This document shows, in pieces, positions 494 to 33,057 of a stretch of DNA of 34,811 nucleotides. The first letter of the stretch is position 1, and every line of letters starts with the position of its first letter. Both the position numbers and the translations under genes were made by a program. The notes below the pieces were generated by a model. The model was not told where the DNA came from. It saw only the letters and a program-made list of their open reading frames with translations, and made no database searches. Source of the DNA: Octopus bimaculoides (lineage: Eukaryota); assembly GCF_001194135.2 (NCBI RefSeq), contig NC_068999.1, positions 55,095,214-55,130,024 on the forward strand, given 5' to 3'.

Positions 494-1188
494 CTGGGTT
501 GTCCAGAAAGACCGTGCTGATTTTTAAAGGAAAGAAAAAGGTCAATAAATACTTGCCATTACATTTTTAATCAACCAAATATGAACCATTTTGTTGCACA
601 ATGCGTCTCCATCTTTCCTTTAACTTGAAAATACCCTCTTCCCAGAATTGAGGTGGTTTCGTGGCAAAGAATTCATCAAGGTATCTTTTTACGTCATCCA
701 AGGAATTGAAATTTTTACCATTAAGACTATTCTGTAGAGACCCGAATAAGTGGAAATCCGAAGGAGCAATATCTGGTGAATATGGAGGGTGGGGTAACAC
801 ATCCCAGCCTAGCTGCAGCAATTTTTGTCCGGTTCCCAAAGAAACGTGTGATCTTTCATTATCATGTTGGAAAACAACACCCTTCCTGTTGGCCAATTCT
901 GGACGTTTCTCTTGAATTGCTGCTTTTAACTCATCCAATTGTGTGCAATATTTCTCAGAATTAATTGTCTGGTTACATGGGAGAAGCTCATAGTACAGAA
1001 TTCCTTTCCAATCCCACCAGACACAAAGCAAGACTTTTTTAGGGTGAAGACCAGCTTTTGGGGTGGCTAAGGGTGGCTCATGTCACTTACTCCAGGATCG
1101 CTTTCTCTGAACATCTTGGTAGATAATCCATTTCTCGTTGCCTGTCACAATTTGCTTTAAAAAACGTGTGTTTTCATTCCGTTTATAA
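494..1188 (-). mobile_element. mariner (DD34D-type) DNA transposon, 3' half, degenerate transposase
   Basis: The translation contains FLKQIVTGNEKW (TGDEKW motif with D>N), KKVLLCVWW, HDNE (HDNA-like) and HPPYSPDIAPSDFHLF. A TIR-like end CTGGGTTGTCCAGAAAG follows TA at 492-493. A stop/frameshift lies near 1083. Confidence 0.93.
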
Positions 1189-2849: not shown

Positions 2850-3950
2850 TAGTTGATAGTTTCTCTAAATGGCCAGAAATTTGTAAGTGTAAAAACCAAC
2901 CTCCTCAACTGTGACAAATTTTTTACATGAGCTGTTTGTGAGATTTGGCATCCCGGACACTATAGCATCTGACGATGGAACATAATTTGGGTCTTGAATT
3001 TAAAAAGTTCTGTAAAACATTCACTGTAGAATATGTAACTATGGCGCCATACCATCCCAGGTCTAAAAGACAAGCAGAACACTTTGTTGATATATTCAAG
3101 AAAGCCCTAAGAAAGTCAAATAAGGAAGTCACGGATGAGGTAGCTCTACAACAGTTCTTAAGAGTATACCGTCTGACATCAAATCCAAATGCACCTGCAA
3201 GTATGTTACCAGTGGAGCTGATATTTGTGAGGAAAATAAAATCAGTCTTTGACAAATTGCTACCTGGCAAGAAAAAAATTGCAATGGAAAATACAGCAAG
3301 ATTTTTCAAAATTGGTGAAAAGGTATTTGTGATGGCATATAAGAATGGAAAACAGAGTTGGGAAGATGGCGTGATGACCAAATGCATAGGAAAAATGCTA
3401 TACTTGGCAAAAAGTAGAAAAGCCATATACAAAAGATGCATTAACCAACTGAAAAAATGATTTGTTGAGAGCAAACCCAAAAGAATGGAAGAACCAATGG
3501 AATGATTATATGATACTTTTCAAGTATCAACGCCACTACAGTTGATTGAACCCAAGTGCACAAGTGTAAGAAAAAGAAAATGTATGGAATTCCTGGAAGT
3601 AGATGTCAAATGGAAAAAATATTATATGTGTAACAAAGGAAAAAAAAAACTCAAAAAAGGGAGGTGGGGTGATCTAAAACATATTGCTATTAAAAGAAAT
3701 AAAATGACTTTCCCTAAGAAAAAAGAACTTAAAAAAGGGGAGATGCTGTGGGGATGATAGTAATAATGGTATACCCCTCCCATATGACAAGTTGTATGTG
3801 ATAGTCACTATAAATAAGGTGATGTCGGTCAGTATAAAGAGAGAGTACAAAATAGATGGTCATAGATAGTTGTGGTCTTACTTGCCTTGCTAACTATACA
3901 ACTATACCAGAGTGGGTGTTATAACAATCCAGAGATTAAGGATTACAACA
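2850..3950 (+). mobile_element. Ty3/Gypsy LTR retrotransposon 3' fragment (integrase, PPT, 3' LTR)
   Basis: Integrase core FGIPDTIASDDG...APYHPRS..QAEHFV is present. The polypurine tract AAAAAAGGGGAGA (3731-3743) directly precedes TGCTGT at 3744. Confidence 0.88.
3744..3950 (+). repeat. 3' LTR of the Gypsy element (about 207 bp)
   Basis: It starts TGCTGT straight after the PPT and ends ACAACA at 3950 (TG...CA, imperfect 6-bp inverted termini). Confidence 0.7.
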
Positions 3951-6925: not shown

Positions 6926-8205
6926 TGTACATCAGGGCTTAAGTCACCAGTTATTTCTGTTTAGTTCATTCAGATTTGTTTCACACTCAATGTTGACATT
7001 CTTCTGTTTTTCTTCTAGCAGAAGTTCCTTTTCTGCTGCTGACCAACTTCCTTGCTAGCCCACAGCGAAGTTTCTGTCTAAGGTTCCTCTGTCATGAATT
7101 CTGCCCTACATAGCCCCACCCCAGAACTGTTGACTGTCATTGAAAACAGGAAGGTGTTTTAATTGTCCTGCCCATGCGTATAGTAATTCGATTCTTTAGT
7201 GACTGTTCTTTGTCAAGGGTTGGTGTGATCTGTCTAGGACGGCCCTGTTTGATGGCTGAGCCACTTGAACAGATGGGCCAGTTTCAATCTATCGATGGAG
7301 ACTGTGTCTTGTCGTCTGCCAATTAGGAGTTAGAATGATTTATCTCCCGGACGTATGACTTGATATGGACCATTGTAGGGTGACTGGAGAGGTTTTCGTC
7401 GTGTGTCACATTGAATGAACACAAAGTTAGCTGTGTGGAGGTCATTTGGTACAGATGATCTGGGTGTACTGTGTGTTGACATGAGAACAGGGCGCAACTG
7501 GCCCACACTGTCTCTCAGTTGAGCGAGGTACCTTTTGACATTTGGGTCTGACTTCATATTCGGAAGGAACTCTCCTGGCACTGTAAGAGGAGCACTGTAC
7601 ATAATTTCCATGAAGGAAGTGTTGAGAGTTTCTTTTGGAGTGGTGCGGATTCCCAGCATCACCCATGGGAATTGGTCAATCCAATTTCGCCTGTTAAGTC
7701 TGGTTGTCAGGGATTCCTTCAGGCGGTGGTCAAATCTCTCCACTAATCCATTAGCTTGTGAATGGTAGGCTGTTGTGTGGTTCATTGTGATTCCGAAAAG
7801 GTCACACATGTCATTCCACAGCTTTGAGGTGAATTGTGGACCCCAATTGGATGAGATGCTATCTGGAACACCAAAATGGGTGACCCAGTTTGTGATGAAG
7901 GCTCAGCTGACTTCTTGTGTTTCTGTACTGTGGAGAGGGATAGCTTCAGGCCAACGGGTGTAGCGGTCTACCAAGGTCAGTAGATACGAGCAACTCTGTG
8001 AAGGTGGTAGGGGGCCGACAAGGTCAATGTTAACATGGCTGAATCAGGTCTGAGGTGGTTCATAGTTGCCAAGGGGTGCTTTGGTGTGTTGATAGACCTT
8101 GGCTTGTTGACAGGGGATGCAGAACCTGGTCCAGTCCCCAATTTGCTTGGCCATACCATGCCAGATAAATTTGCTTGGCAGCAGCCACTGTGTAGCTTTA
8201 GTACC
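6926..8205 (-). mobile_element. Ty3/Gypsy LTR retrotransposon 3' fragment (integrase, PPT, 3' LTR 6926-7110)
   Basis: Integrase motifs include CIPCQQAK (Zn finger CC), IDLVGPLP, LTLVDRYTRWPEAIP, TTAYHSQANGLVERF and the GPY/F motif PLQSPYNGPYQV. PPT GGGGTGGGGC (7122-7113) precedes an LTR with TGTA...TACA termini. Confidence 0.92.
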
Positions 8206-9060: not shown

Positions 9061-10510
9061 AATTATCTAAATTTTTCCTTTAAAGAAGGAGCTTATTTCT
9101 AAGAAAGATACATGCAAAGCCCCATCAGACATGTATGTGCATATGTATGTATGTGGTGGTGGTGGTGGTGGTTGTGGTAAGGGTAGTGTTTTCTTTTTTC
9201 TCATGTGGTTGTACTACTAACCATCAATTTATTTCACTATGTGACACAAAGTAGCTGGCACCCACCTTTCAATTTACAAATTCTGGTACAAAATTTGTCT
9301 ATATTAATGAAAACATATATCATTTAATTTAATTTCTAACTTTTATAATATTTGCCTCATCTTCCTTAGTCAAGGGTTTTATATTTCTTTATAGTTTGTT
9401 AATCCCATAAATTATTTTGACATTAATTAGTGTATATGGCCTTTATAATTCATTGTGATTCTTATAAACTCTTTTAACATTTTCTTATTACCTCCAATAA
9501 TTTTGAATTATTTTAGAAGTGATTTAACTATCTGTTGAACCTATCTGATTTTAATTGGTTTGCTTTATTCTAAAAAATATCCCTGTGACAATATGGTTAA
9601 TAGAAATGTTTGGTTTCATGGCTTTTTTTTCCTTCTCTTTTATTCCTGGTCTTTCAGCTTGTAACTTCTTTGTAGCTACATAACTGATCTCTATAAATTT
9701 CAGTATTTAACTAACACAAATTCATAAACTTATATCTTTATGTTGACACAGATTACTGTGCCTAGGATGCACAGTTATTTGTTTATGCCAATAACATCTT
9801 CCTGTCAATGTGTTGACCACTTTCTGTATTTGATTTATCCTATTCTGTGTCTATTTAAGTATTCACAGGATATCATTGCTAGTACTGTAATTATGGCTAT
9901 CTCTAAATATAAATTACTTCTTTCCCTTTTCCTTCCCTCTCATCTGAAATTTCACTAATCTGCAGTAAAATTAGCTCTTTAAGGTTTGGCGATCTCAACT
10001 CTTATTAGAAAGTAATTTCTTTATTAAAAAAACCTTCAGAATAAATTGGGTATCTTGGTCCCCGTTGATAAAATAGGAACCCTTTATCAACAGGATTTTA
10101 ACCTCTAGCATGATATGATTCTGAAAGAATTACACTGGAACTATAAAGTTACTCCTCGATGTAATCTGGATAACATCAACTCTGATGCTTATAAAATAGC
10201 TTATAAACTGAAGTTAGAGGACTGCAACTGAACACCAGGACTAAGGAACCAAGGATCAACTTAAAAAACCACAAGGAAACTTCATGGATAACCCTCCTCA
10301 TAACCGTCATCTTGAAGATATCGAAAAGAAGTCAACTAAATGTCGTTTGTAATATTGAATTCAAAAGGAATATTTATAAAAGGAATAATTATCTCTGTAA
10401 ATTGAAAGATCAAAACTATTCCTTAGTTTAATGTTTATATCTTCAGTTGTCTGTTCCCTATTGAATTTATCTATATTTTATTTTACTTCGTTGTTTATAC
10501 ATATTTCTAA

Positions 10511-18852: not shown

Positions 18853-20116
18853 CAGAGTGTGTAAAGTATTTGAGGACATATCTTTTTGGGGTCATTGCTG
18901 CATTTTTTACTAACTCTGTATAATCTTTATTTCAAAAAATAATAATGGCAGAGCCTCACTCAGTTTAGTCAAGAAATGAAGGGTCATGCTCTTATTGGGG
19001 TTATAAAGGCTGAACATAGTGATTTAGAAACATCTCGATTGTTAAAAGTTGCCAGATCTTTCTTCTACATAGTTTGTAAGGAGTTAGAGACTGAAGATGG
19101 AAACATATTACCAATATCAAAACATAAAAAGTATCCTAAATGCTGTGAAATCATCAGAACACCTGAATTTATCCAACAAGTTCAACAGACCATTGATTAC
19201 AATCCCAGAAAGTCTATGAGGTCAACTGCAAAAGATCTCCAGGTGTCAGAAGGAAAAGTCAGAAATGTTGTCCATGAAGATATCAGATATAAGTCTTATA
19301 TGATGAGGAAAGGTCAGTTTGTCAGAAAAAGCAAAAGAAAGCCACTACATCAGATCTAAAAGCTTCTTAAACAAACTGAAGAATGCAGCAGCAGATTTGA
19401 TTTGGTTTTTCTCAAACAAGAAAAACTTCGACCAAGATCAAAAAGTTAACAGAAGAAATGACAGATGGTTATGTGCAGACCCTTCTGAAGTTCCAAGTGT
19501 TATGCATACAAAATTTTCTGCAACTGTCATGGTTTTAGGGGTTGTCAGCAATGAAGGACATGTGATGCCTCCTTACTTCTTTCCACAAGGCCTTAGAGTT
19601 AACTCTGTCACCTATATTGAGGTCCTGGAAACAATTGTTAAACTCTAGATAGAGCGTGTATGCAATGGAAGGCCATATGTGTTTCAGTAAGACTCTGCAC
19701 TATCACACATGGCTTTAGTAACACAGGAATGGATGGCTGAAAATTTTCATGATCACATAACCCCTAACATTTGGTCTTCTAATTCCCAAGATCTCAATCC
19801 ATTGGACTATTACATGTGGAGCACTTTTGAGAGAGAAGTCAATGAACACGCTCATAACACCAAAGATTCTTTGAAAGCTGCCATAGTCAGAGTAATGTCC
19901 AAAATGAACCAGGGACCATTTGATTCAAGCATGTGGATGATTTAGATCTTGTATAGAAGCAGTTGTTGAAACTGAAGTTGGCTTTATTGAATGACATTAT
20001 AGAAAAGAAGGTTTATTTTTATCCTCATAACATTTTTTTTTATAAAGTTATTATGTGTTATTATATATCCCTTTTTTATAGCCATAAATTTGTTCTCAAA
20101 TATCTTACTCACCGTG
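18853..20116 (+). mobile_element. full-length, inactivated DD37D (maT) Tc1/mariner transposon
   Basis: Imperfect TIRs CAGAGTGTGTAAAGTATTTGAGGACA / TGTTCTCAAATATCTTACTCACCGTG carry TA on both sides (18851-52, 20117-18). The transposase has FSNKK (FSDEK-like), Q*DSA and SQDLNPLDY, with 37 residues between the last two aspartates, and is broken by stops and frameshifts. Confidence 0.92.
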
Positions 20117-20240
20117 TACATACACACGCGCGCGCGCGCACACACACACACACACATACATATATATTCATATACATATATATATACACATATATTCATA
20201 CATGTGTTTGTGTGTGTGTGTTTCAAATACTCTATATCTC

Positions 20241-20872
20241 TCAGACCAAATTTCCAAAGAATGTCCCAGCAAAAATAAATAGAAATGCTAACCCTACACC
20301 TTCTTTATAACTGAGCACTGATACTGGCGATTCATTGGAATGCTGTAACTCTATGAGTTTCTGGCAGCACACAAGAAAGTGGGCTAAATCAGGAATCATC
20401 AAACCAATGTTTCGTAGGTTTTGGAATGCTTTTCCTTGTACAAAAAAGACTTGAATAATAAACTGGTCAGCTCCATTAACCAAAATATGTATTGAGGAAA
20501 TGCATAGGATGAAAAATATCTTCTTGAAGGTGATAGGGTTGTGAGAATCACACATATTCAGAACAAAACCAGAAACAATTAATTCCGTAATTATGAAGTA
20601 GGTATGGTGGGTGAAGTATAAGTAGAAGCCCTCGTTGATGTAGCTGAATAAAGACCACCATGAATAATAATGAGGATAGATGTTTATGACAAACAAACTG
20701 AGCATCACCCAGCGGACATGCAATCGTGGAAATAGTAAGTTGCATATGTATTTTACACTTTCATATGATATTAACACAAAGAATAAGGTGATAATCCAAA
20801 CTGCATATGTCTGTAGGGTGGAATTGAAGTAGATGTGCTTGTATCTGATATTCTTGTGGTCTTCATAGCTAC
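20241..20872 (-). CDS. terminal coding exon of an uncharacterized multi-pass membrane protein
   Basis: A strong acceptor CCTTTTCTTTTCCCTCTCCTCTAG precedes 210 open codons (SYEDHKNIRYKHIYFNST...PHYYSWW...RNIGLMIPDLAH...GNLV*) with several hydrophobic helices. Confidence 0.9.
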
Positions 20873-21095
20873 CTAGAGGAGAGGGAAAAGAAAAGGAATT
20901 AATAATAAAGATGAAGATTAAAGAAATATTTTAATTCCATTTATCAGCAATATTTAGTTAAACATGTACAATGAGGAAGGCACAAAATACTCACATTGTA
21001 TATTCTACTGATATTGGGAAAATGAAGGGAAGAAAGACAGTAGAAAATGAAAGAAGGAAGAGGACGAATAAGTAAAAAAACATTGATGTACATAC

Positions 21096-21185
21096 CACGG
21101 AAGACAGTATCAAAACAGGAACAAGTGCAGGTAGAACGGTTAACAGGAATTTTGTTTGGTACCCAGATTAATTTGTGGTAAATGG
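21096..21185 (-). CDS. internal coding exon (90 nt, phase 1-1)
   Basis: Acceptor TTAATATTCCACAG and donor G|GTATGT flank AIYHKLIWVPNKIPVNRSTCTCSCFDTVFRG, which is in frame with the next exon. Confidence 0.85.
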
Positions 21186-21474
21186 CTGTGGAATATTAAG
21201 GTAGTTAAGATGGTGAATGATTCAGTTGTGTTGCATGGAAGAATGGCAAAAATGGTTCTTGGTATACTAAAATTATCACCTCTAAAAGAGATATCAGAAT
21301 TACCAAATGGCTTTTAAGACCAGCTCCATATGAGACAGGGATAATCTTAAGAATCAAGAATTTTCCAAAGTTGACATGTCATTAGGAAAAAAGACAAACT
21401 CATTGTCAGGATATAAAAGGACAATGGTAGAAATGTGTTTCTGCCTCAATATGCCTCATCAGCACAACAGTTAC

Positions 21475-21513
21475 CATAATCTGTCTCCAGCAGCCAAGGG
21501 ACATTGACATATA
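21475..21513 (-). CDS. candidate 39-nt internal coding exon (phase 1-1)
   Basis: Acceptor TGTGTTCTATTCTTTAG and donor G|GTAACT flank VYVNVPWLLETDY, which keeps the frame. Confidence 0.65.
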
Positions 21514-21899
21514 CTAAAGAATAGAACACATTTATGGCTTAGGCAATTTGCCGTAAAACCAGGACATATTTAAAACCATAGTAACTGTAGGACATACGTA
21601 AAAATATCAAGGAAAATTGTAACACAAACTTTCATTTAACAGACATAGCATCAGATTTTGTAAAATGTCAGAAAAGATTGTAACACTATGTGTGATGTAA
21701 CATCAAAAAATTTGCAGCACCATGTCTCACGTCACATCAGGTCATATGCAATGGTATAGTATAATAGTAACACCAAGGTACATTTAAAACAACAGGACTT
21801 GGAAAATACTAAAACTAAGTTAACAGCAGGCCTTGTGCAAGACTGAGACAAACGAAGCACCATTTGTGTATATGATTAAGACATGTAAAACATGAGTTA

Positions 21900-22280
21900 A
21901 GTTAAAGATCTTCTCCCAGTCGACTGTGGTACTGTGGTTTATTCTTAGCTAAGTATGTCTCCTGCAGTTGTCTCACTAGGAGGAGGGCATTGACGATATT
22001 GTTTCCATGCACAAACGAACTCAAACTGCATTCCATTTTGCCTGTTTTTCTCCCTAATAAGTTGTACTGTAACTCTTCCAGTAACTTTTGAATCATTATA
22101 TAATGCCTCTGTAACTTCTGCTCTGGAGATGCATTTTCTTTGCCCTTTTGGTGGTCGTTAATGATACTGCTACCCTTTCTCTGTATTACCCAACTAACGA
22201 TGCATATGATTATTGTGTAATCTGCCTGGCCAGTATTTTCAGTGTCTTAGTGACTCTACTCGACAGTCCAACTGTTGCAT
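21900..22280 (-). mobile_element. RTE reverse transcriptase remnant in the intron
   Basis: Degenerate KGK..SYRGII and ALLLVRQLQETYLAKNKP resemble RTE RT motifs. Confidence 0.7.
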
Positions 22281-23490
22281 GGAAATCAATTGTAAACAAG
22301 GAATGGTGGAAATATCTAGTACAGAACATCAATGATTTAATCAGAAATACAAATGAAGAAAAGAGAAAATTGATCAAACTAATGGCATGTTTTAGTCTTT
22401 CTCAGTTAAGCTTACACTACACTGTACTTGCAAAAATAACGTACAGAGAATCAATAAGTAGGATTACAGTATTGTAATGTGTGTAATGTTTAAACAAATT
22501 TGTTCAAACTAGTGGGACCCGTGAATATTTCATGGAATTAATAGTAAACTTATTGGGTTATTTCTGAAAACTTTATCCAAAAAACCTGAAAACATATCCT
22601 GTGTTGTGTCTGTATCAAAAGATAGTCGTTCATCTGCTAATCATTGGAAAGTGAAGGCAATTGGATGATTATTTAATGCACTTTATATGTACACTATATA
22701 TATTTATACACAATTTTATAGACTTAATACACAGCACTCGCCCTCTTTCTCTCTCACTCTTCGCCTTACCCTCTTTTTCTCTCTCCTTTTTCTTTCGCTT
22801 TTTGCCTTTCCCTTCAACTAATCATGTGGAAGTGTTATGGACAGGCTAAGTTATGGAGGAACTAGCAGGATTGTTGCGAAATGTTGCTTAAGGTCAACAT
22901 TTGAATAAAGAAAAAGAAAATCAATAGGTAAGGAAACACATGTTAAATATGGTGAAATTGATACAGTTGTAAGACTTGAACTTATGACCATGTGATGTGT
23001 AGTCCAGCACTTTAACTTTACAGCCATTGTCTCTCATGCCAAACAAATAAATTAGTAAATGAACCGATGAGAAATGTCTCTATGTGATCATTTGACCTGT
23101 TGGGTATAATAATCAAATCTCCCTCAAATCAAACCTTATACATACATCAAATATTATACATACATGTCTATCAGTCAGTATGTATGTATGTATAAATGAG
23201 CAAATCAAAACCTCAACAGCCAGAAGCAGAAATTTTTCTCATATCACACCCTTATATCTTAAATATACACATACATATATGCTAGAGCTAAATTGCTAGG
23301 TCCTATCACTACACAGGAGATAACCTAATATAAATAGCAGCCAAATTCCCAGCCGCTGCCACCACTACCACCACTACCACCACCAAATCATTTCCTAACA
23401 TGTTAAAAGAAAGAGAAAAGAATCCATTGGACATGATTATGACAGGAACATTTTAGGTCCTACATCTGTTGAATCAAGGTTGAACTAGAG

Positions 23491-23832
23491 CAGTGACTCT
23501 CAACCGGGGTCCGTATGGTCCCTGAGGGTCCATATAAGATTTTTAAGGTACACACAACAAATTGAAGATCCACAATAGTATTTTAAGAGCCCCTAAAAAA
23601 GTTTTGCATTAGATGTATTTATTGGTATGTAATTTCAAGAAACAGCTAGGTTTCTCTCACTAACATTTAACATAATTCAACACACACATGTTAATGTGCA
23701 AAATACAAATTAGGAATTTTGAAAGAAGTTTCTATAAAACTAGTTTATAAACCTCATATGGTTATGGGGGTCCACCAGAATCAAATAGTAATCAAAGGGT
23801 TCCATAGATAAAAGAATGGTTGCGAATCCCTA
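23491..23832. mobile_element. hAT (Charlie-type) MITE, 342 bp, with an 8-bp target-site duplication
   Basis: TIRs CAGTGACTCTCAACC / GGTTGCGAATCCCTA are flanked by identical AACTAGAG at 23483-23490 and 23833-23840. Confidence 0.92.
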
Positions 23833-23926
23833 AACTAGAGGTTATATGGATAAAAAAAAAAATTATAATGATAAAAGCATGTAAATGAATGTACACAAAA
23901 AACATATTTGCTTTGAAGTGACTTAC

Positions 23927-24071
23927 CGATTTGTATAAAAGGTAATAGTGCCAGAAATATTAATGCACTTATAAAAGGAAAAGTTTTCTTTCGTACTTCA
24001 GTTATGGAACAATCTATGAAGAGATATTTCACATAAACTTGGAGTCGTTGGTTTAAATACCAGGTATACAT
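23927..24071 (-). CDS. probable first coding exon of the membrane-protein gene
   Basis: Acceptor TTTAAATTTCAG (AG at 24085-24084) is followed by 12 nt, then ATG at 24071. It encodes MYTWY...RKKTFPFISALIFLALLPFIQI and ends at a strong donor G|GTAAGT in phase 1. Confidence 0.75.
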
Positions 24072-24168
24072 CTTCTTGTACTTCTGAAATTTAAAGCATG
24101 TAAATGTATACATAATATGAATGTAAGACATAAAAGGAAATGAGTCTGGTATGAACATATAAGTTCAA

Positions 24169-24335
24169 AGCATTTATAAAAGGAAGAGTCTTCTTTTGTG
24201 CTTCAGCTATAGAATAATATAGAGTTGTTTCACAACAATATGAAACAACAATCTAGAGTTTTTTCACAAAGACTTGGAGGCATTTGCTTAAAAACCTGAT
24301 ATACATCTCTTGTACTTCTGAAACTTAAAGTATGA
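24169..24335 (-). pseudogene. degenerate tandem duplicate of the first coding exon
   Basis: It has the same acceptor and ATG layout (ATG at 24306), reads MYIRFLSKCLQVFVKKL* and lacks the donor. Confidence 0.7.
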
Positions 24336-24344
24336 GAATTTTTC

Positions 24345-24728
24345 TTTTACTTGTTTCAGGCATTTGACTGCAGCCATGCTGGAGCACTGCCTTGAAGGGT
24401 TTTAGTTGAACAAATTGACCCGAGGACTTATATTTAAGTCTAATGCTTATTCTATCAGTCTCTTTTTCCAAGCCTCTAGGTTATGGGGATGTAAACACAC
24501 CAACACTGGTTGTCAAGTGGTGGTAAGGGACAAGTACAGACACAATGATACACACACATAAATATATATATCTATATATGATGGGCTTCTTTCAGTTTCT
24601 GTCTACCAAATCCACTCATAAGTCTTTAGGCACCTCAAGGCTACAATCGAAAACACTTGCCCAAGGTGACACACGGTGAACCCATAACCACATGGTTGGG
24701 AAGGAAACTTTTTTCCACACAGCCACAC
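24345..24728 (-). mobile_element. near full-length tRNA-derived SINE
   Basis: It carries the reverse complement of the GGCTGTGTGG...CACCTTGGGCAAGTG head seen at 15612, an internal CA/TA tract and the 3' body shared with 4340-4500. Confidence 0.85.
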
Positions 24729-28585: not shown

Positions 28586-29057
28586 CATCATCATCATCAT
28601 CATCGTTTAACGTCCGCTTTCCATGCTAGCATGGGTTGGACGATTTGACTGAGGACTGGTGAAACCGGATGGCAACACCAGGCTCCAATCTAATTTGGCA
28701 GAGTTTCTACAGCTGGATGCCCTTCCTAACGCCAACCACTCAGAAAGTGTAGTGGGTGCTTTTACGTGTCGTATCATCATCATCATTATCATCATCATCA
28801 ACGTCATCATTTAACATCTTTTTCGATGCTGGCATGAGTTGAACTGTTTGAAAGGAGCTGGCCAGACAAAAGTCTGCACCAAGCTTTAGTGTCTGTTTTG
28901 GCAGGGTTTTTAAGTCTGGACGCCCTTCCAAATGCCAACAACTTTACAGTGTGAAATGGATGCTTTTTATGTGGCATCATTACTGGCAGGGTCAGCGAGT
29001 AACTTTCAAGAGAAAGATCCTTTGAGAGGGGAGGGGGTCTTGGGAGGATGTGATCTT
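28586..29057 (-). mobile_element. two head-to-tail RTE-type 3' ends (28586-28770 and about 28773-29057), each with a (TGA)n tail
   Basis: Each starts with (CAT)n on the plus strand, followed by TTTAAC.TC..TTT.C.ATGCT.GCATG and GGA.GCCCTTCC.AA.GCCAAC. Confidence 0.85.
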
Positions 29058-31525
29058 GTGCATCAACAGCCAAGGCATTCCTAGTCCACCCTTTAACGGT
29101 TTCTGGCAGCAAACAGAGCGCCTCACAAGTGGCGTTTTCCCTTTCCACAAAAAGCGGAACAGGATCCGTTCCATCGGTTAGGCGGTAGGTTATTACAGAG
29201 GCTATAAACACCTGTGCCACCTCCGCCCTTCCCAACAAGGATAACGTCCTCCCGGACCACTTCCGGGCTATGTCCGTCACCTTGTTCGCCACCTCGTGCA
29301 AGTTCTTCTCTACTTGGAGATCCAGTCCAAACCAGATCCTGAGCATTTTAACCGGGCCCTCCGTCCAACATCCGACGACGCTGTTGGGAAGCATCGACTT
29401 GCCCCTCCAGGTGCCGAGTTGCAAGCCGACAGACTTTTCCTGGTTAATTTTAGCTCCCGCCACCGTCTCGTATCCTTTGATGGCGTTTTCTACACAAGGT
29501 AGCTGCCCTTCGTCAGACACGATGATGGTGACATCATCCGCATATGCCGTAACACTCCTTCTGTAACATAGATCACGCGGGTCTGCCCCCAAGTTTCCCA
29601 GTCTCCGCAGCAGTGGCTCAATCGCCAATACATACAGTAACGGCGATAGGGGACAACCCTGGCGAACCGAACGCTCGATCGCGAATGGGTTCAAAAGAAA
29701 CCCATTCACCCGGACCACGGATTCGATATCAGTATACATTGCTTGAATCCAACCTCGGAAGGTCGGGCCCATACCTGCCGCCCGAAGGACCGCCGCCAAA
29801 TACTCATGGTCAACCCTATCAAAAGCCTTAGACTGGTCTAAATTCACCAGTGCCCCGCCTTTGCCAGGAATTTTACCAACCCGCTCTATGGTGTAGCGAA
29901 TGAGGTGAAGGTTGTCATGTATCGTCCTTCTTGGGATGACACATGTCTGTGCCTCTCCCACCAGGTCGCCTACGACAACCCTCACTCTCTTCGCTAGCAC
30001 CTTGGCCAAAATCTTTAACTCTGTGTTAAGCAGAGTTATGGGCCTGAAATTATTAATAATGTCCCCCTTGCTCGGGTCCTTCCTGATCAGCGTCACNNNN
30101 NNNNNNNNNNNNNNNNNNNNNNNNNNNNNNNNNNNNNNNNNNNNNNNNNNNNNNNNNNNNNNNNNNNNNNNNNNNNNNNNNNNNNNNNNNNNNNNNNNNN
30201 NNNNNNNNNNNNNNNNNNNNNNNNNNNNNNNNNNNNNNNNNNNNNNNNNNNNNNNNNNNNNNNNNNNNNNNNNNNNNNNNNNNNNNNNNNNNNNNNNNNN
30301 NNNNNNNNNNNNNNNNNNNNNNNNNNCCTCCCGAACAAAGTGACAAAGTGCTCGTGGAAGGCCTCACATATCTCCTCATGTCCTTGGATCTCCTGTCCAA
30401 GCTCATTTACCACAGACCTAATCGTGGCCTTCACACCACGACGGGTTTCTTCCGAGCGGGACCATCTGGCAACATTGATACCTTCACGACCCATTGCACG
30501 ACACTTAGCCCGAACTCTGCATCCTTCGTGTTTGGCATTGAGGTGTCGGTCTAGTGCCGATCTCGCCGCCGAAACTTGTGAAGCAGAGTCCATTCTCAAT
30601 GCCTCTTCTAGTGCCTCAATTAGATCCCGTTCTACTCTAGACTGTTCTAAACTTAGCTGTTTACTATATCTAATGACTCAAGTCGAATGGCTCTTTTGAG
30701 GGCACTCCACCACCGGTTGTTAATCACAGGGCCGGATAGTGCCCTCTTTACTAACACCTTAATCTGACTACGGTACGTTTCACAATTAAAGTCTTGTTCA
30801 GCTTCCAATAGCCAGATCCCTGACTATGGACCTTATCTATATGTACCGTACATGTCACTAATTTGTGATCCGTGTCGGGTACATAGGTAAATTGTGGACA
30901 GTTTAAACTATCCTTATCTCTATCACTTACAATAATCCTATCTATATACGATCTGATCGATCCGTCGTAATTTGTCCATGTCCACATTGACACGCTCGGA
31001 TTACTAGATCGAAATCGATCTACCAGCCTATATCGCTTCAGTAGATCTACGAGGCATGAGTCATTTTTCCTAGCGTTAGAGCCGACGCTATCCAGAATAG
31101 CGTTAAAATCACCTAACACAACTACTGTCTTAGATGTCACAAGAAAATTCTCCAGGCGTCGAAAGAAGCCATCTCGTTTGCTTGGTGTCCCAGGCGCGTA
31201 GATGCCAACCAACCTGAAGGCCACTAATTGTCAGATCCAGAACGACCGACTCGCCTTCTGGGTCCATGAAGATTGTACGTGTCTGCATGACCAGACTTTT
31301 CCGGAGCAAAATCACTACGCCTCTACTCCCTCCCTCCCGGCTAGGGGACATGATTTTGTCGTAGCCGTTTAGGAGGGGTGTGAAGTCCCGTAGTTTGTCC
31401 AGCCTGGTCTCTGTAGTGACCATAACATCAATTTTGTGTGCTCTGAGGTCGTCGAAGAGGCACACCTGCTTCTTCTTCGACCCCAGGCCACGGACATTCA
31501 AACAAGCAATACTTAGCATAGCCAT
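29058..31525 (-). pseudogene. ORF2 (AP endonuclease + reverse transcriptase), frameshifted
   Basis: The translation shows MAMLSIACLNVRGL, TETRL, VGIYAP, LGDFNA, IDRII, TDHKLV, FRPITLLNTELKILAK, LDQSKAFDRVDH, VRQGCPLSPLLY, AYADD and GGLGMP. Confidence 0.93.
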
Positions 31526-33057
31526 ATCGAAAAAGGAAAGAGGGTTGCACTTTCGTTCGTTTCGAGTGGATTTCCTTTTCGCCTTCTTCCATTTGGCCAC
31601 TGTCTTTGACGAAGGGTTCAACCGGCAGGTCAAACATCTCTGTAGGGTTTTGTACTATCCGAATATCTTCCGGATGACATTTCCTTAAATCGTAGTACAG
31701 TTTCTCTGGTACTTTGGCTGTTGTGATGGCCTTTTTGGTGTCGTTTACAAAGTACACATTTGACTCTAGACGGGGTTTAATAACCCCGTCTAGATATTTG
31801 TTCTTCGTTCTGTATTGTATCAAGATCTTTTTGTCTTTTTTTAAGTCTATTAATCCTTTATATGGGTTTGTTGATCTTTTTCTCTCCATTTTGTTTTTCG
31901 GGGCCTGCTCAGAGGTGGGGGGGGGCAGTCCTTCCTCTTACTTCTTCTTCTTGCCACCTCCTTGAACCCTCTCTCACTTGTTTCGCTTGCTGGCGTCTCT
32001 TTTGCTGAAGCTGCTTTCTTGTTCGTGGGTGCCTCCTCCACATTACTCTGAGGGGCATTGTTTTCAGAGGTTGTCGCCGACCTCGTGCCAGCCTCCGTGG
32101 CCAATGGTGCCACTTCTGTGATTGATGGCTGAATATAGGCCTCCTTGGCCTTCGATATTGTTGGCCTGTTGTTTGAGGTGGACGCCGGCTTCGTAACGAC
32201 CTCCATGGTTGTCGGCGCCGCCTCTATCGTTACTGGCTGGATCACTTGTTGGTTCTTGTTGGCTACTGTTTTTAGAACGGCCTCTGAGGCCATCGGTGCC
32301 TTCTCACTGGTGGTCGNNNNNNNNNNTCTATCGTTACTGGCTGGATCACTTGTTGGTTCTTGTTGGCTACTGTTTTTAGAACGGCCTCTGAGGCCATCGG
32401 TGCCTTCTCACTGGTGGTCGGTTGCATATTGGCCTCCCCTGCCGCTGTTGACACATGTTGGGTTATCGACCTCTTATTCTTAGAAGCGTCAGCCGCCGAC
32501 TGAGTGACTGTCACCTTGGCCGCCGATGCTGCCACTGTGGTCACTGGCTGTGTGCCTGCCTCTTCGACCTGTCGTTCCACTTCTATATTTAGTTCCTTCT
32601 ATTTCGGGCATTTGGACCTCAGGTGCCCCTTCTTTCCGCGATGGAAGCACCTGAGTTTACGTCCTTCAACGTGAATTGGGATGATTTTATCGTTAATATT
32701 TATGGTCTCGGGTAGTTCTTCTCGGTGGAGGCTGGAAGCCTGCACCAATATCTCAAGGGACTGCCCTTTCCAGTTCGTTGGGCCATCCCTCGTTACTTGG
32801 ATTATGTTTATTTTATCCTCTCTCTTGTATAGTAGTGTAGCCATAATACAGTCTACATCTACCTCTGGTGGTATATGTTGAATCTTTATCCTGGACGTCC
32901 TCCGTCCCAGATAAAGTGGTAACAACATTATTTTGCCACTTGTTACGGTTTGGGTTGAGAGATTCCTTGCTCTCTCGCTGGATTCGAACCTGGCTTCCAC
33001 TGTTGCGTATTTTTTGCCACGGGCCAAATACTTCACTTCATTCATAATATGCCCGAG
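31510..33057 (-). pseudogene. ORF1 (RRM-like region, CCHC knuckle, low-complexity Thr/Ala/Glu linker), frameshifted
   Basis: CFHRGKKGHLRSKCP is a CX2CX4HX4C knuckle with the second Cys changed to Arg, and it lies upstream of ORF2. The 5' part falls in the gap 33058-33441. Confidence 0.8.

What the first reader, a model, noticed from the sequence alone, without database searches (positions are those of the whole stretch)
20241..24083. Hidden four-exon gene for a 301-aa multi-pass membrane protein
Seen: minus-strand segments 24071-23927, 21513-21475, 21185-21096 and 20872-20241 have canonical GT-AG boundaries, all phase 1. They total 906 nt and splice into one stop-free frame: MYTWYLNQRLQVYVKYLFIDCSITEVRKKTFPFISALIFLALLPFIQIVYVNVPWLLETDYAIYHKLIWVPNKIPVNRSTCTCSCFDTVFRGSYEDHKNIRYKHIYFNSTLQTYAVWIITLFFVLISYESVK...PHYYSWW...THHTYF...SSIHILVNGADQF...RNIGLMIPDLAHF...GNLV*. 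The two internal exons are absent from the ORF track. The protein has an N-terminal TM helix, a loop with CTCSC and two N-x-S/T sequons (NRS, NST), and about six further hydrophobic helices. Inference: the His/Asp/Ser residues inside the helices suggest a membrane enzyme or metal-binding protein (loosely CREST-superfamily-like) rather than a GPCR. I recall similar uncharacterized invertebrate proteins but cannot name a family.
Basis: partly seen in the sequence, partly recalled or inferred. Interest (0 to 1): 0.85.

Follow-up and report, generated by a model that had tools for sequence, protein, structure and literature searches.

The report
Annotated octopus gene, uncharacterised 7-helix membrane protein
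The window holds a real octopus gene for a seven-helix membrane protein, but it is already annotated (LOC106879219, 288 aa, three coding exons, not four), and it belongs to a widespread eukaryotic family that nobody has characterised.

Summary
They have AG/GT boundaries and join into a stop-free 301-codon frame. Three of them (24071-23927, 21185-21096, 20872-20241) are the complete coding sequence of the RefSeq model "uncharacterized protein LOC106879219 [Octopus bimaculoides]", 288 aa, matched at 100% identity. So the gene is real but not hidden.

The 39-nt "exon 2" (21513-21475) is absent from that model and from the O. sinensis orthologue model. None of about 60 aligned homologues has an insertion at that junction. 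An element like it is expected by chance in about half of shuffled introns. It is most likely a pseudo-exon. A rare alternative cassette cannot be excluded without RNA-seq.

AlphaFold2 predicts seven transmembrane helices (pLDDT 80, pTM 0.77). Loop charges favour an N-in/C-out topology. The CREST idea fails: all three defining motifs are missing and there is no fold match.

The family has 742 representatives at 50% identity. Named members come from molluscs, annelids, brachiopods, arthropods, amphioxus, a hemichordate, fungi and the heterolobosean Acrasis. It has no Pfam model, no PDB sequence match and no Foldseek match. Conserved residues point to an extracytoplasm-facing polar pocket, so an enzyme or an ion/metal binder is the best guess. 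Function remains inferred.

The parts
23927..24071 (-). Coding exon 1 (ATG at 24071; residues 1-48 plus the first base of codon 49). Encodes the N-terminal cytosolic segment and TM1. Donor is GTAAGT.
   Evidence: the spliced CDS translates exactly to RefSeq protein P0001; the tblastn HSP reads 98% because it overruns the donor site. One search shows the same exon in O. sinensis L001 at 10001-10145.
21186..23926 (-). Intron 1 (2741 nt, GT...AG, phase 1). Roughly 23230-21650 has no counterpart in O. sinensis. It also contains the 39-nt candidate.
21475..21513 (-). Most likely an intronic pseudo-exon and not part of the annotated CDS. A minor alternative cassette is not excluded.
   Evidence: Absent from P0001 and P0002 and from all homologues. 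Chance expectation is 0.86 per shuffled intron. AG, GT and the open frame are kept in O. sinensis, but the whole flanking intron is 93-95% identical. No copy exists in the paralogue's intron.
21096..21185 (-). Coding exon 2 (90 nt; residues 49-78). Encodes the end of TM1 and the start of extracytoplasmic loop 1, including C68-x-C70-x-C72-F-D74-T.
   Evidence: O. sinensis L001 12017-12106, with AG/GT.
20873..21095 (-). Intron 2 (223 nt, GT...AG, phase 1). It is 94.6% identical to the O. sinensis intron.
20241..20872 (-). Coding exon 3 (632 nt including the TGA at 20243-20241; residues 79-288). Encodes YKHxYFN(S/T) and TM2-TM7, with YPHYYSWW, NE, HH, TE, H207, DQF, RN and PD.
   Evidence: (E = 5e-140).
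24166..24345 (-). Degenerate partial tandem copy of exon 1 and its upstream TTTCAG. It has an in-frame stop (MYIRFLSKCLQVFVKKL*) and lacks the TM1 end and the donor. It is a relic, not an exon.
   Evidence: It is also present in O. sinensis.

Best explanation
Shown: the locus is the already annotated Octopus bimaculoides gene LOC106879219. It has three coding exons on the minus strand (24071-23927, 21185-21096, 20872-20241) and encodes a 288-aa polytopic membrane protein.

Shown: it is one of two head-to-head paralogues in Octopus. Its partner is the LOC115222212 type, which keeps the longer and better conserved N-terminus.

Shown: it belongs to a widespread eukaryotic family of about 270-320 aa. 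Named members include molluscs, annelid, nemertean, brachiopod, flatworm, crustaceans, hemipteroid insects, amphioxus, a hemichordate, Mucoromycota and Blastocladiomycota fungi, and the heterolobosean Acrasis. The family has no Pfam model, no solved relative and no published function.

Most likely: the 39-nt 'exon 2' is an intronic pseudo-exon.

Inferred mechanism (not shown):
- Seven TM helices with the N-terminus in the cytosol and the C-terminus outside.
- A roughly 45-residue extracytoplasmic loop 1 carries the invariant C-x-C-x-C-[FW]-D and Y-[KR]-x-x-[YF]-[FW]-N motifs. This loop caps a polar pocket that opens to the lumen or exterior.
- The pocket is lined by the outer ends of TM3-TM6 (Y156, N158, D/E159, H167, D214-Q215, R232). 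It reaches two buried acidic residues near mid-membrane (E175 in TM4, D240 in TM6).
- This layout fits an intramembrane enzyme acting on a lipid or glycan head-group from the luminal leaflet, or an ion/metal-binding transporter. It fits a receptor less well.
For: Gene model:
- The spliced translation was verified.
- The three-exon splice reproduces the RefSeq protein residue for residue, with tblastn hits at 98-100% identity, and the DNA is 100% identical to the GCA_001194135.2 assembly.
- The O. sinensis orthologue has the same three exons with AG/GT boundaries.
- The paralogue has the same exon plan and lies about 13 kb away on the opposite strand.
- dN/dS is 0.36, and every family-invariant residue is retained in both species.

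Family:
- 56 hits at E <= 0.01 to the single sequence, the best non-cephalopod hits at about 1e-70 to 1e-88.
- 742 representatives at E <= 1e-3, and 133 at E <= 1e-30.
- Source names give the taxa, and all are labelled uncharacterised or hypothetical.

No known family:
- Pfam returns nothing at E <= 1 for the protein, and no consistent family for 29 members.
- PDB sequence and profile searches return nothing.
- Foldseek returns no match at E <= 0.001 against PDB or BFVD for the octopus model, and none against PDB for the Acrasis model. The best TM-scores are 0.38 or less.

Structure and topology:
- AlphaFold2 gives pLDDT 80.4 and pTM 0.77 with helices at 23-56, 98-125, 133-159, 165-185, 194-221, 227-256 and 267-287.
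- The Acrasis homologue gives the same seven-helix plan.
- Mean K+R in short loops is 7.4 on the proposed cytosolic side against 3.4 on the outer side, across 29 sequences.
- The N95-x-[ST] sequon in loop 1 is kept in all 33 metazoan sequences.

Conserved residues.
Against: - No experiment or characterised homologue supports any activity.
- The pocket geometry is read from the positions of residues along predicted helices.
- Loop 1, which carries the Cys motif, is the least confident part of both models (pLDDT about 50).
- Three conserved Cys is an odd number for disulfides, so their role (metal, intermolecular disulfide or catalysis) is open.
- Topology rests only on the positive-inside rule and a sequon.
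- For the pseudo-exon call, the 39-nt element keeps its AG, GT and open frame in O. sinensis. RefSeq models can miss rare microexon isoforms.
Confidence: 0.75

Rival explanations
1. One reading: a four-exon gene giving a 301-aa protein, with the 39-nt microexon included either constitutively or as a regulated alternative cassette.
For: The element has a T-rich acceptor (TTCTATTCTTTAG), a GTAACT donor (5 of 6 consensus positions) and preserves the frame. Its AG, GT and open frame are kept in O. sinensis with only two substitutions, one W->R and one synonymous. It lies in an intron block that is 93-96% identical between the species. Flanks of real alternative exons can be this well conserved (established knowledge).
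Against: It is not in the RefSeq models of either species, and no isoform with the insert is in the protein collection. No homologue has extra residues there. The paralogue's equivalent intron has no such element. The insert would fall inside the TM1 helix and split the conserved LP[FY]xH[IL]G motif. Its identity (37 of 39) is no higher than that of the surrounding intron, including intron 2. Chance gives 0.86 equally good candidates per shuffled intron.
Confidence: 0.12
2. It is a divergent member of the TLC (TRAM/LAG1/CLN8) and ELO/TMEM120 group of six-helix-barrel acyl-CoA enzymes. The His pair on TM4 (H167-H168) would act as the CerS His211/His212 pair does.
For: UniRef names the Macrostomum lignano family member P0118 'TLC domain-containing protein'. 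CerS6 has seven TMs, a six-helix barrel formed by TM2-TM7, HH on TM4 and Asp residues on TM5 (PMC11919693). The octopus protein has HH at the start of TM4 and H207/D214 on TM5.
Against: Pfam PF03798 is not hit by any of 29 members at E <= 1, including P0118. A family profile finds no CerS6, Lac1 or Lag1 chain in PDB at E <= 10. Foldseek with two models finds no CerS or ELOVL; TMEM120A appears only at E = 4.4 with TM 0.19. The second His is Gln in most of the family, and the first is Ser, Thr or Tyr in many members. The spacing differs from the Lag1p motif: HH then D-x-x-D about 27 residues later in CerS6, against HH then D214 46 residues later here. The predicted orientation (TM4 running outside-to-inside) is opposite to CerS6. 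An internal three-plus-three repeat was not detectable.
Confidence: 0.08
3. This copy is a decaying or functionally released duplicate. The conserved function resides in the neighbouring paralogue (LOC115222212 type).
For: Its N-terminus has lost the Q-x-Y-x-E-x-x-L-T-x-x-H segment that other family members keep. Between O. bimaculoides and O. sinensis the exons differ more (11.8%) than the aligned introns (7.9%, p = 0.003). The three codon positions differ almost equally, at 12.8, 9.7 and 12.8%. A dead partial copy of exon 1 lies just upstream, and the surroundings are rich in transposon debris.
Against: The 288-codon frame, the splice sites and every family-invariant residue are intact in both species. 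dN/dS is 0.36, which is below 1. Amino-acid changes avoid the conserved motifs.
Confidence: 0.1
4. It is a seven-TM receptor or ligand-gated channel with inverted (N-in) topology, like the insect OR/GR '7TMIC' proteins.
For: It has seven helices and a predicted N-in/C-out topology. The patchy distribution across eukaryotes recalls GR-like proteins (my own knowledge, not tested here).
Against: No Pfam 7tm_6/7tm_7 match. Neither model gave a Foldseek match at E <= 0.001 and no Orco/OR/GR entry appears among the 50 best matches listed; whether those structures are in the library copy is assumed from general knowledge. At 288 aa the protein is much shorter. Its conserved residues are Cys, Asp, Glu and Asn in a loop and mid-membrane, rather than a TM7 pore motif.
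Confidence: 0.04

Closest known systems
RefSeq LOC106879219 (O. bimaculoides), its orthologue LOC115222213 (O. sinensis), and the paralogue LOC115222212
   Same: Identical protein once the 39-nt segment is omitted. Same three coding exons. 81% amino-acid identity to the orthologue and about 60-63% to the paralogue.
CREST superfamily (alkaline ceramidase, PAQR/AdipoR, Per1/PGAP3, SID-1, TMEM8)
   Same: Seven predicted TM helices, with polar and acidic residues inside the bundle.
   Different: SxxxH (end of TM2), Asp (start of TM3) and HxxxH (start of TM7) are all absent. There is no Pfam, PDB-sequence or Foldseek match.
TLC domain proteins (ceramide synthases, TRAM, CLN8, TLCD) and the related ELOVL/TMEM120A barrels
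   Same: Seven TMs, with TM1 set apart from TM2-TM7 by a long loop. A His pair on TM4 in molluscan members. One flatworm member carries an automatic 'TLC domain' name.
   Different: No profile or fold match. The His pair is not conserved. The motif spacing differs and the predicted orientation is opposite.

Membership tests
Uncharacterised eukaryotic 7-TM family with the C-x-C-x-C-[FW]-D loop (no Pfam accession found) | Full-length sequence homology to the other members | tested here: met
   E = 1e-148 to 4e-36 for 55 other proteins. A family profile finds 742 representatives at E <= 1e-3.
Uncharacterised eukaryotic 7-TM family with the C-x-C-x-C-[FW]-D loop (no Pfam accession found) | Conserved residues C68, C70, C72, D74, Y89, N95, Y156, N158, E175 and D240 are present in order | tested here: met
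   All are present in the window's protein. C70, N158 and D240 are invariant and the others are >= 90% conserved in the 29-sequence deep alignment.
Uncharacterised eukaryotic 7-TM family with the C-x-C-x-C-[FW]-D loop (no Pfam accession found) | Seven TM helices with a long loop between TM1 and TM2 | tested here: met
   AlphaFold2 models of the octopus and Acrasis members.
CREST superfamily | SxxxH motif at the end of core TM2 (PMC3146951) | tested here: not met
   TM2 (residues 98-125, LQTYAVWIITLFFVLISYESVKYICNLL) contains no His.
CREST superfamily | Conserved Asp at the start of core TM3 | tested here: not met
   TM3 starts VRWVMLSLF (helix from residue 133; H131-V-R precede it) and has no Asp. 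The family consensus there is R-x-x-M.
CREST superfamily | HxxxH motif at the start of core TM7 | tested here: not met
   TM7 (267-287, KEGVGLAFLFIFAGTFFGNLV) has no His.
CREST superfamily | Sequence or fold similarity to AdipoR, ACER3 or SID-1 | tested here: not met
   No Pfam hit. No PDB profile hit at E <= 10. No Foldseek hit at E <= 0.001 with two models.
TLC (TRAM/LAG1/CLN8) domain | Match to the TLC profile (Pfam PF03798) | tested here: not met
   None of 29 members matches at E <= 1, including the flatworm protein that UniRef names TLC. The PROSITE profile behind that name could not be run here.
TLC (TRAM/LAG1/CLN8) domain | Lag1p-type motif: a conserved HH on TM4 and D-x-x-D on TM5 (PMC11919693) | tested here: not met
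   HH occurs only in molluscan members. Most of the family has HQ or [ST]Q, and there is no D-x-x-D at the corresponding spacing.
TLC (TRAM/LAG1/CLN8) domain | Six-helix barrel fold like CerS6, ELOVL7 or TMEM120A | tested here: inconclusive
GPCR / 7TM receptors | N-out/C-in topology and a rhodopsin-like helix arrangement | tested here: not met
   Positive-inside counts favour N-in. GPCR Foldseek hits score only E > 2 with TM 0.14-0.24.

The most novel reading that the evidence does not exclude
The protein represents an ancient eukaryotic 7-TM family, present from Heterolobosea and early fungi to amphioxus. No vertebrate turned up among the named members I sampled. Its fold would be unlike any solved structure, and its luminal C-x-C-x-C-[FW]-D loop and buried Glu/Asp pair would form a new kind of intramembrane catalytic or metal-binding site. 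The octopus copy in this window would be a fast-evolving, lineage-specific duplicate of it.
Probability: 0.35. Interest if true: 0.55.

Novelty: already known. Interest (0 to 1): 0.3.

Why it matters
For the genome scan, this is a correction. The "hidden gene" is an existing RefSeq model, and the extra microexon is probably a false splice prediction. This shows how readily frame-preserving AG...GT cassettes arise in long AT-rich introns: there are 137 in this one.

The lasting point of interest is the family. It is well conserved and phylogenetically broad. It has no Pfam entry, no structural relative and no literature, and I saw no vertebrate or standard model organism among the named members I sampled, which may help explain why it is unstudied. 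Its invariant Cys triad and buried acidic residues make testable predictions for anyone working on orphan membrane enzymes or transporters.

Tried and rejected
- Pfam scans of the protein, of 29 family members and of the longer members (looking for domain fusions) gave nothing consistent.
- PDB sequence searches with the protein and with the family profile gave nothing.
- Foldseek of the octopus model against PDB and BFVD, and of an independent Acrasis-based model against PDB, gave only noise, with E >= 0.59.
- The CREST reading was rejected on motifs and fold.
- The TLC lead, from one automatic UniRef name, was followed but not confirmed.
- An hhalign test for an internal TM2-4 / TM5-7 repeat was not significant (Prob 0.5%).
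- Literature searches on six LOC identifiers and on "CXCXC motif" found nothing relevant.
- Rfam found nothing in the window that would explain the well-conserved introns.
- I looked for transcript-derived contigs across the exon 1/exon 2 junction. P0007 turned out to be a genomic contig covering only the last exon.
- tblastn found no paralogue inside the window.
Full report
**1. What is in the sequence**

Each internal boundary has AG upstream and GT downstream. The raw observation is therefore accurate.

**2. Which parts are a gene**

A search of about 5.8 billion proteins returned, as best hit, NCBI "uncharacterized protein LOC106879219 [Octopus bimaculoides]" (E = 7e-184). That protein has 288 aa.

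tblastn of that protein onto the window gives three blocks: 20873-20244 at 100% identity, and 24071-23925 and 21204-21088 at 98% and 87% only because those HSPs overrun the splice sites; the three spliced exons translate exactly to P0001. The locus is 100% identical over 4.3 kb to record CM046619.1 of assembly GCA_001194135.2, about 25 kb from the end of that 55.1-Mb record. So the window is O. bimaculoides, and the gene is already annotated with three coding exons.

The O. sinensis orthologue (LOC115222213, 288 aa, 81% identity) has the same three exons with AG/GT boundaries.

**3. The 39-nt "exon 2"**

Evidence against it:
- It is absent from the gene models of both species. The two protein clusters each contain a single sequence, so no isoform with the insert is on record.
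- In alignments of 33 close and 29 distant relatives, no sequence has extra residues between the equivalents of I48 and A49.
- That junction lies inside the long TM1 helix (residues 23-56 of the model). It also lies inside the conserved L-P-[FY]-x-H-[IL]-G motif.
- The paralogue has the same intron position but no similar element.
- Intron 1 (2741 nt) contains 137 AG...GT cassettes of 21-300 nt that keep phase 1 and have no stop. Shuffled introns average 85 such cassettes.
- Requiring splice signals as good as this candidate's leaves this one candidate. Shuffles then give a mean of 0.86, and 49% of shuffles give at least one.

Evidence for it:
- In O. sinensis the AG, the GT and the open frame are preserved, with two substitutions in 39 nt.
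- However, the whole intron block around it is 93-96% identical, and so is intron 2 at 94.6%. This conservation is therefore not specific to the element.

I conclude that it is probably a pseudo-exon. A low-level lineage-specific cassette is the only surviving alternative, at about 0.12. RNA-seq would settle this, and I could not run it.

**4. The protein**

AlphaFold2 on the 33-sequence alignment gives mean pLDDT 80.4 and pTM 0.77. It predicts an N-terminal amphipathic helix (2-18) and seven long helices: 23-56, 98-125, 133-159 (kinked at Y144-P145), 165-185, 194-221, 227-256 and 267-287. An independent model of the Acrasis kona homologue has the same plan.

Across 29 family members, the short loops on the side of the N-terminus carry 7.4 Lys+Arg on average, against 3.4 on the other side. 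The N95-x-[ST] sequon in the long TM1-TM2 loop is kept in all 33 metazoan sequences. Both observations favour N-terminus in, loop 1 out and C-terminus out.

| Set | Conserved residues |
|---|---|
| Invariant or >= 90% across the deep alignment | C68, C70, C72, D74 (C-x-C-x-C-[FW]-D), Y89, N95, Y156, N158, E175, D240 |
| Additionally conserved among metazoans | P44, H47, K90-H91, Y115-E116, R132, Y144-P-H-Y-Y-S-W-W151, H167, T174, H207, D214-Q215, R232, P239, H243 |

Placed on the helices, these residues lie in loop 1, at the outer ends of TM3-TM6 and, for E175 and D240, near mid-membrane. This is inference from positions along the helices. I had no coordinates to measure distances.

**5. What it is related to**

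- Pfam has no match at E <= 1 for this protein. It has no consistent match for 29 members or for eight further members, including longer ones that might have carried a fused domain.
- PDB sequences give no match to the protein or to the family profile at E <= 10.
- Foldseek gives no match at E <= 0.001 for the octopus model against PDB or BFVD, or for the Acrasis model against PDB. The best E-values are 0.6-2 and the TM-scores are 0.38 or below.
- An exhaustive profile search finds 742 cluster representatives at E <= 1e-3 and 133 at E <= 1e-30.
- Members that carry names are listed below, and all are called uncharacterised or hypothetical:
  - cephalopods, bivalves and gastropods
  - the nemertean Tubulanus, the annelid Owenia, the brachiopod Lingula and the flatworm Macrostomum
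  - isopod and crayfish crustaceans, a thrips and a planthopper
  - amphioxus (four Branchiostoma taxa) and the hemichordate Ptychodera
  - the fungi Jimgerdemannia and Paraphysoderma
  - the heterolobosean Acrasis
- I saw no vertebrate, Drosophila, nematode or yeast member among the names. Most representatives carry no name, so absence from those groups is not proven.
- Full-text searches for six locus identifiers found no paper.

**6. Tests of named families**

CREST is defined by SxxxH at the end of TM2, Asp at the start of TM3 and HxxxH at the start of TM7 (PMC3146951). All three are absent here: TM2 and TM7 have no His at all. There is also no fold match. Membership is rejected.

TLC: one automatic UniRef name on the Macrostomum member prompted a check.
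- CerS6 has seven TMs, a TM2-TM7 barrel, His211/His212 on TM4 and Asp239/Asp242 on TM5 (PMC11919693).
- The octopus protein does have HH at the start of TM4.
- However, the pair is HQ or [ST]Q in most of the family.
- The spacing to the next acidic residues differs, and the predicted orientation is opposite.
- Neither Pfam PF03798, the PDB profile search nor Foldseek supports the link.
- I keep it as a weak rival (0.08), because Foldseek is not sensitive for helical membrane bundles.

**7. Evolution of this copy**

In O. sinensis the two paralogues lie about 13 kb apart, head to head. In the window, the partner would lie beyond the 34.8-kb end.

The copy studied here has a shortened, divergent N-terminus. 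Against its O. sinensis orthologue, dN = 0.096, dS = 0.27 and dN/dS = 0.36. Replacements avoid all conserved motifs, so the gene is under purifying selection at its core.

One pattern is odd. The exons differ more than the aligned introns: 11.8% against 7.9% (p = 0.003), and against 5.9% for intron 2 plus the 3' part of intron 1 (p = 7e-5). The three codon positions differ almost equally. I have no tested explanation. Fast evolution of a released duplicate, or constraint on the introns, are both possible.

**8. Verdict**

The gene is real and ordinary in structure. Its product belongs to a broadly distributed family with no known relative. The best functional guess is a luminal or extracellular-facing intramembrane enzyme or ion/metal-binding protein, and this remains an inference. 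Interest is modest, at 0.3.

Noticed in passing
window 20241-24071 compared with L001 10001-12964: Between O. bimaculoides and O. sinensis the coding exons differ more (102/864, 11.8%) than the aligned introns (106/1350, 7.9%). Intron 2 differs by only 5.4%. Codon positions 1, 2 and 3 differ by 12.8, 9.7 and 12.8%, while dN/dS is 0.36 and all family-invariant residues are kept. Unexplained.
   Followed up: partly
window 24166-24345 (-): A degenerate partial tandem copy of exon 1, together with its upstream TTTCAG/AAGTACAAG-AGATG context. It has a 22-nt insertion and an in-frame stop, and is truncated before the TM1 end and donor site. It is also present in O. sinensis, so it predates the species split.
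   Followed up: partly
window 24072-24085 (-): The ATG at 24071 is preceded by TTTCAG|AAGTACAAGAAG, an acceptor-like site. The first coding exon may therefore be spliced to an unannotated upstream 5'UTR exon. This cannot be tested without transcripts.
   Followed up: no
window ~21650-23230 (-), inside intron 1: About 1.57 kb of intron 1 has no counterpart in the O. sinensis intron, so it is an insertion or deletion since the species split. It includes a GGT/GGTAGT microsatellite near 23350-23390.
   Followed up: no
L004 3001-9879 and L001 10001-12964 (O. sinensis CM016877.1): The paralogue LOC115222212 lies about 13 kb from the orthologue of this gene on the opposite strand, head to head. It has the same intron positions plus one extra 5' coding exon.
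   Followed up: yes
window 567-1031 (-); 28807-30096 (-); 30751-31224 (-); 31130-33045 (-): Transposon remains flank the gene. There is a mariner-type Transposase_1 fragment (E = 2e-19). There is also a non-LTR retrotransposon with a reverse transcriptase (RVT_1, E = 3e-28) and an endonuclease (Exo_endo_phos, E = 2e-8), interrupted by N gaps. Integrase-like ORFs at 2975-3460 and 7330-7809 gave no Pfam hit.
   Followed up: partly
window 20110-20235: A long (CA)n/(TA)n/(CG)n microsatellite tract lies immediately downstream of the stop codon. Identity to O. sinensis drops to 65% there.
   Followed up: no
P0118 and its cluster (Macrostomum lignano): The flatworm has at least 10 near-identical copies of the family member, on several contigs. 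UniRef labels them 'TLC domain-containing protein', although Pfam's TLC model does not match them.
   Followed up: partly
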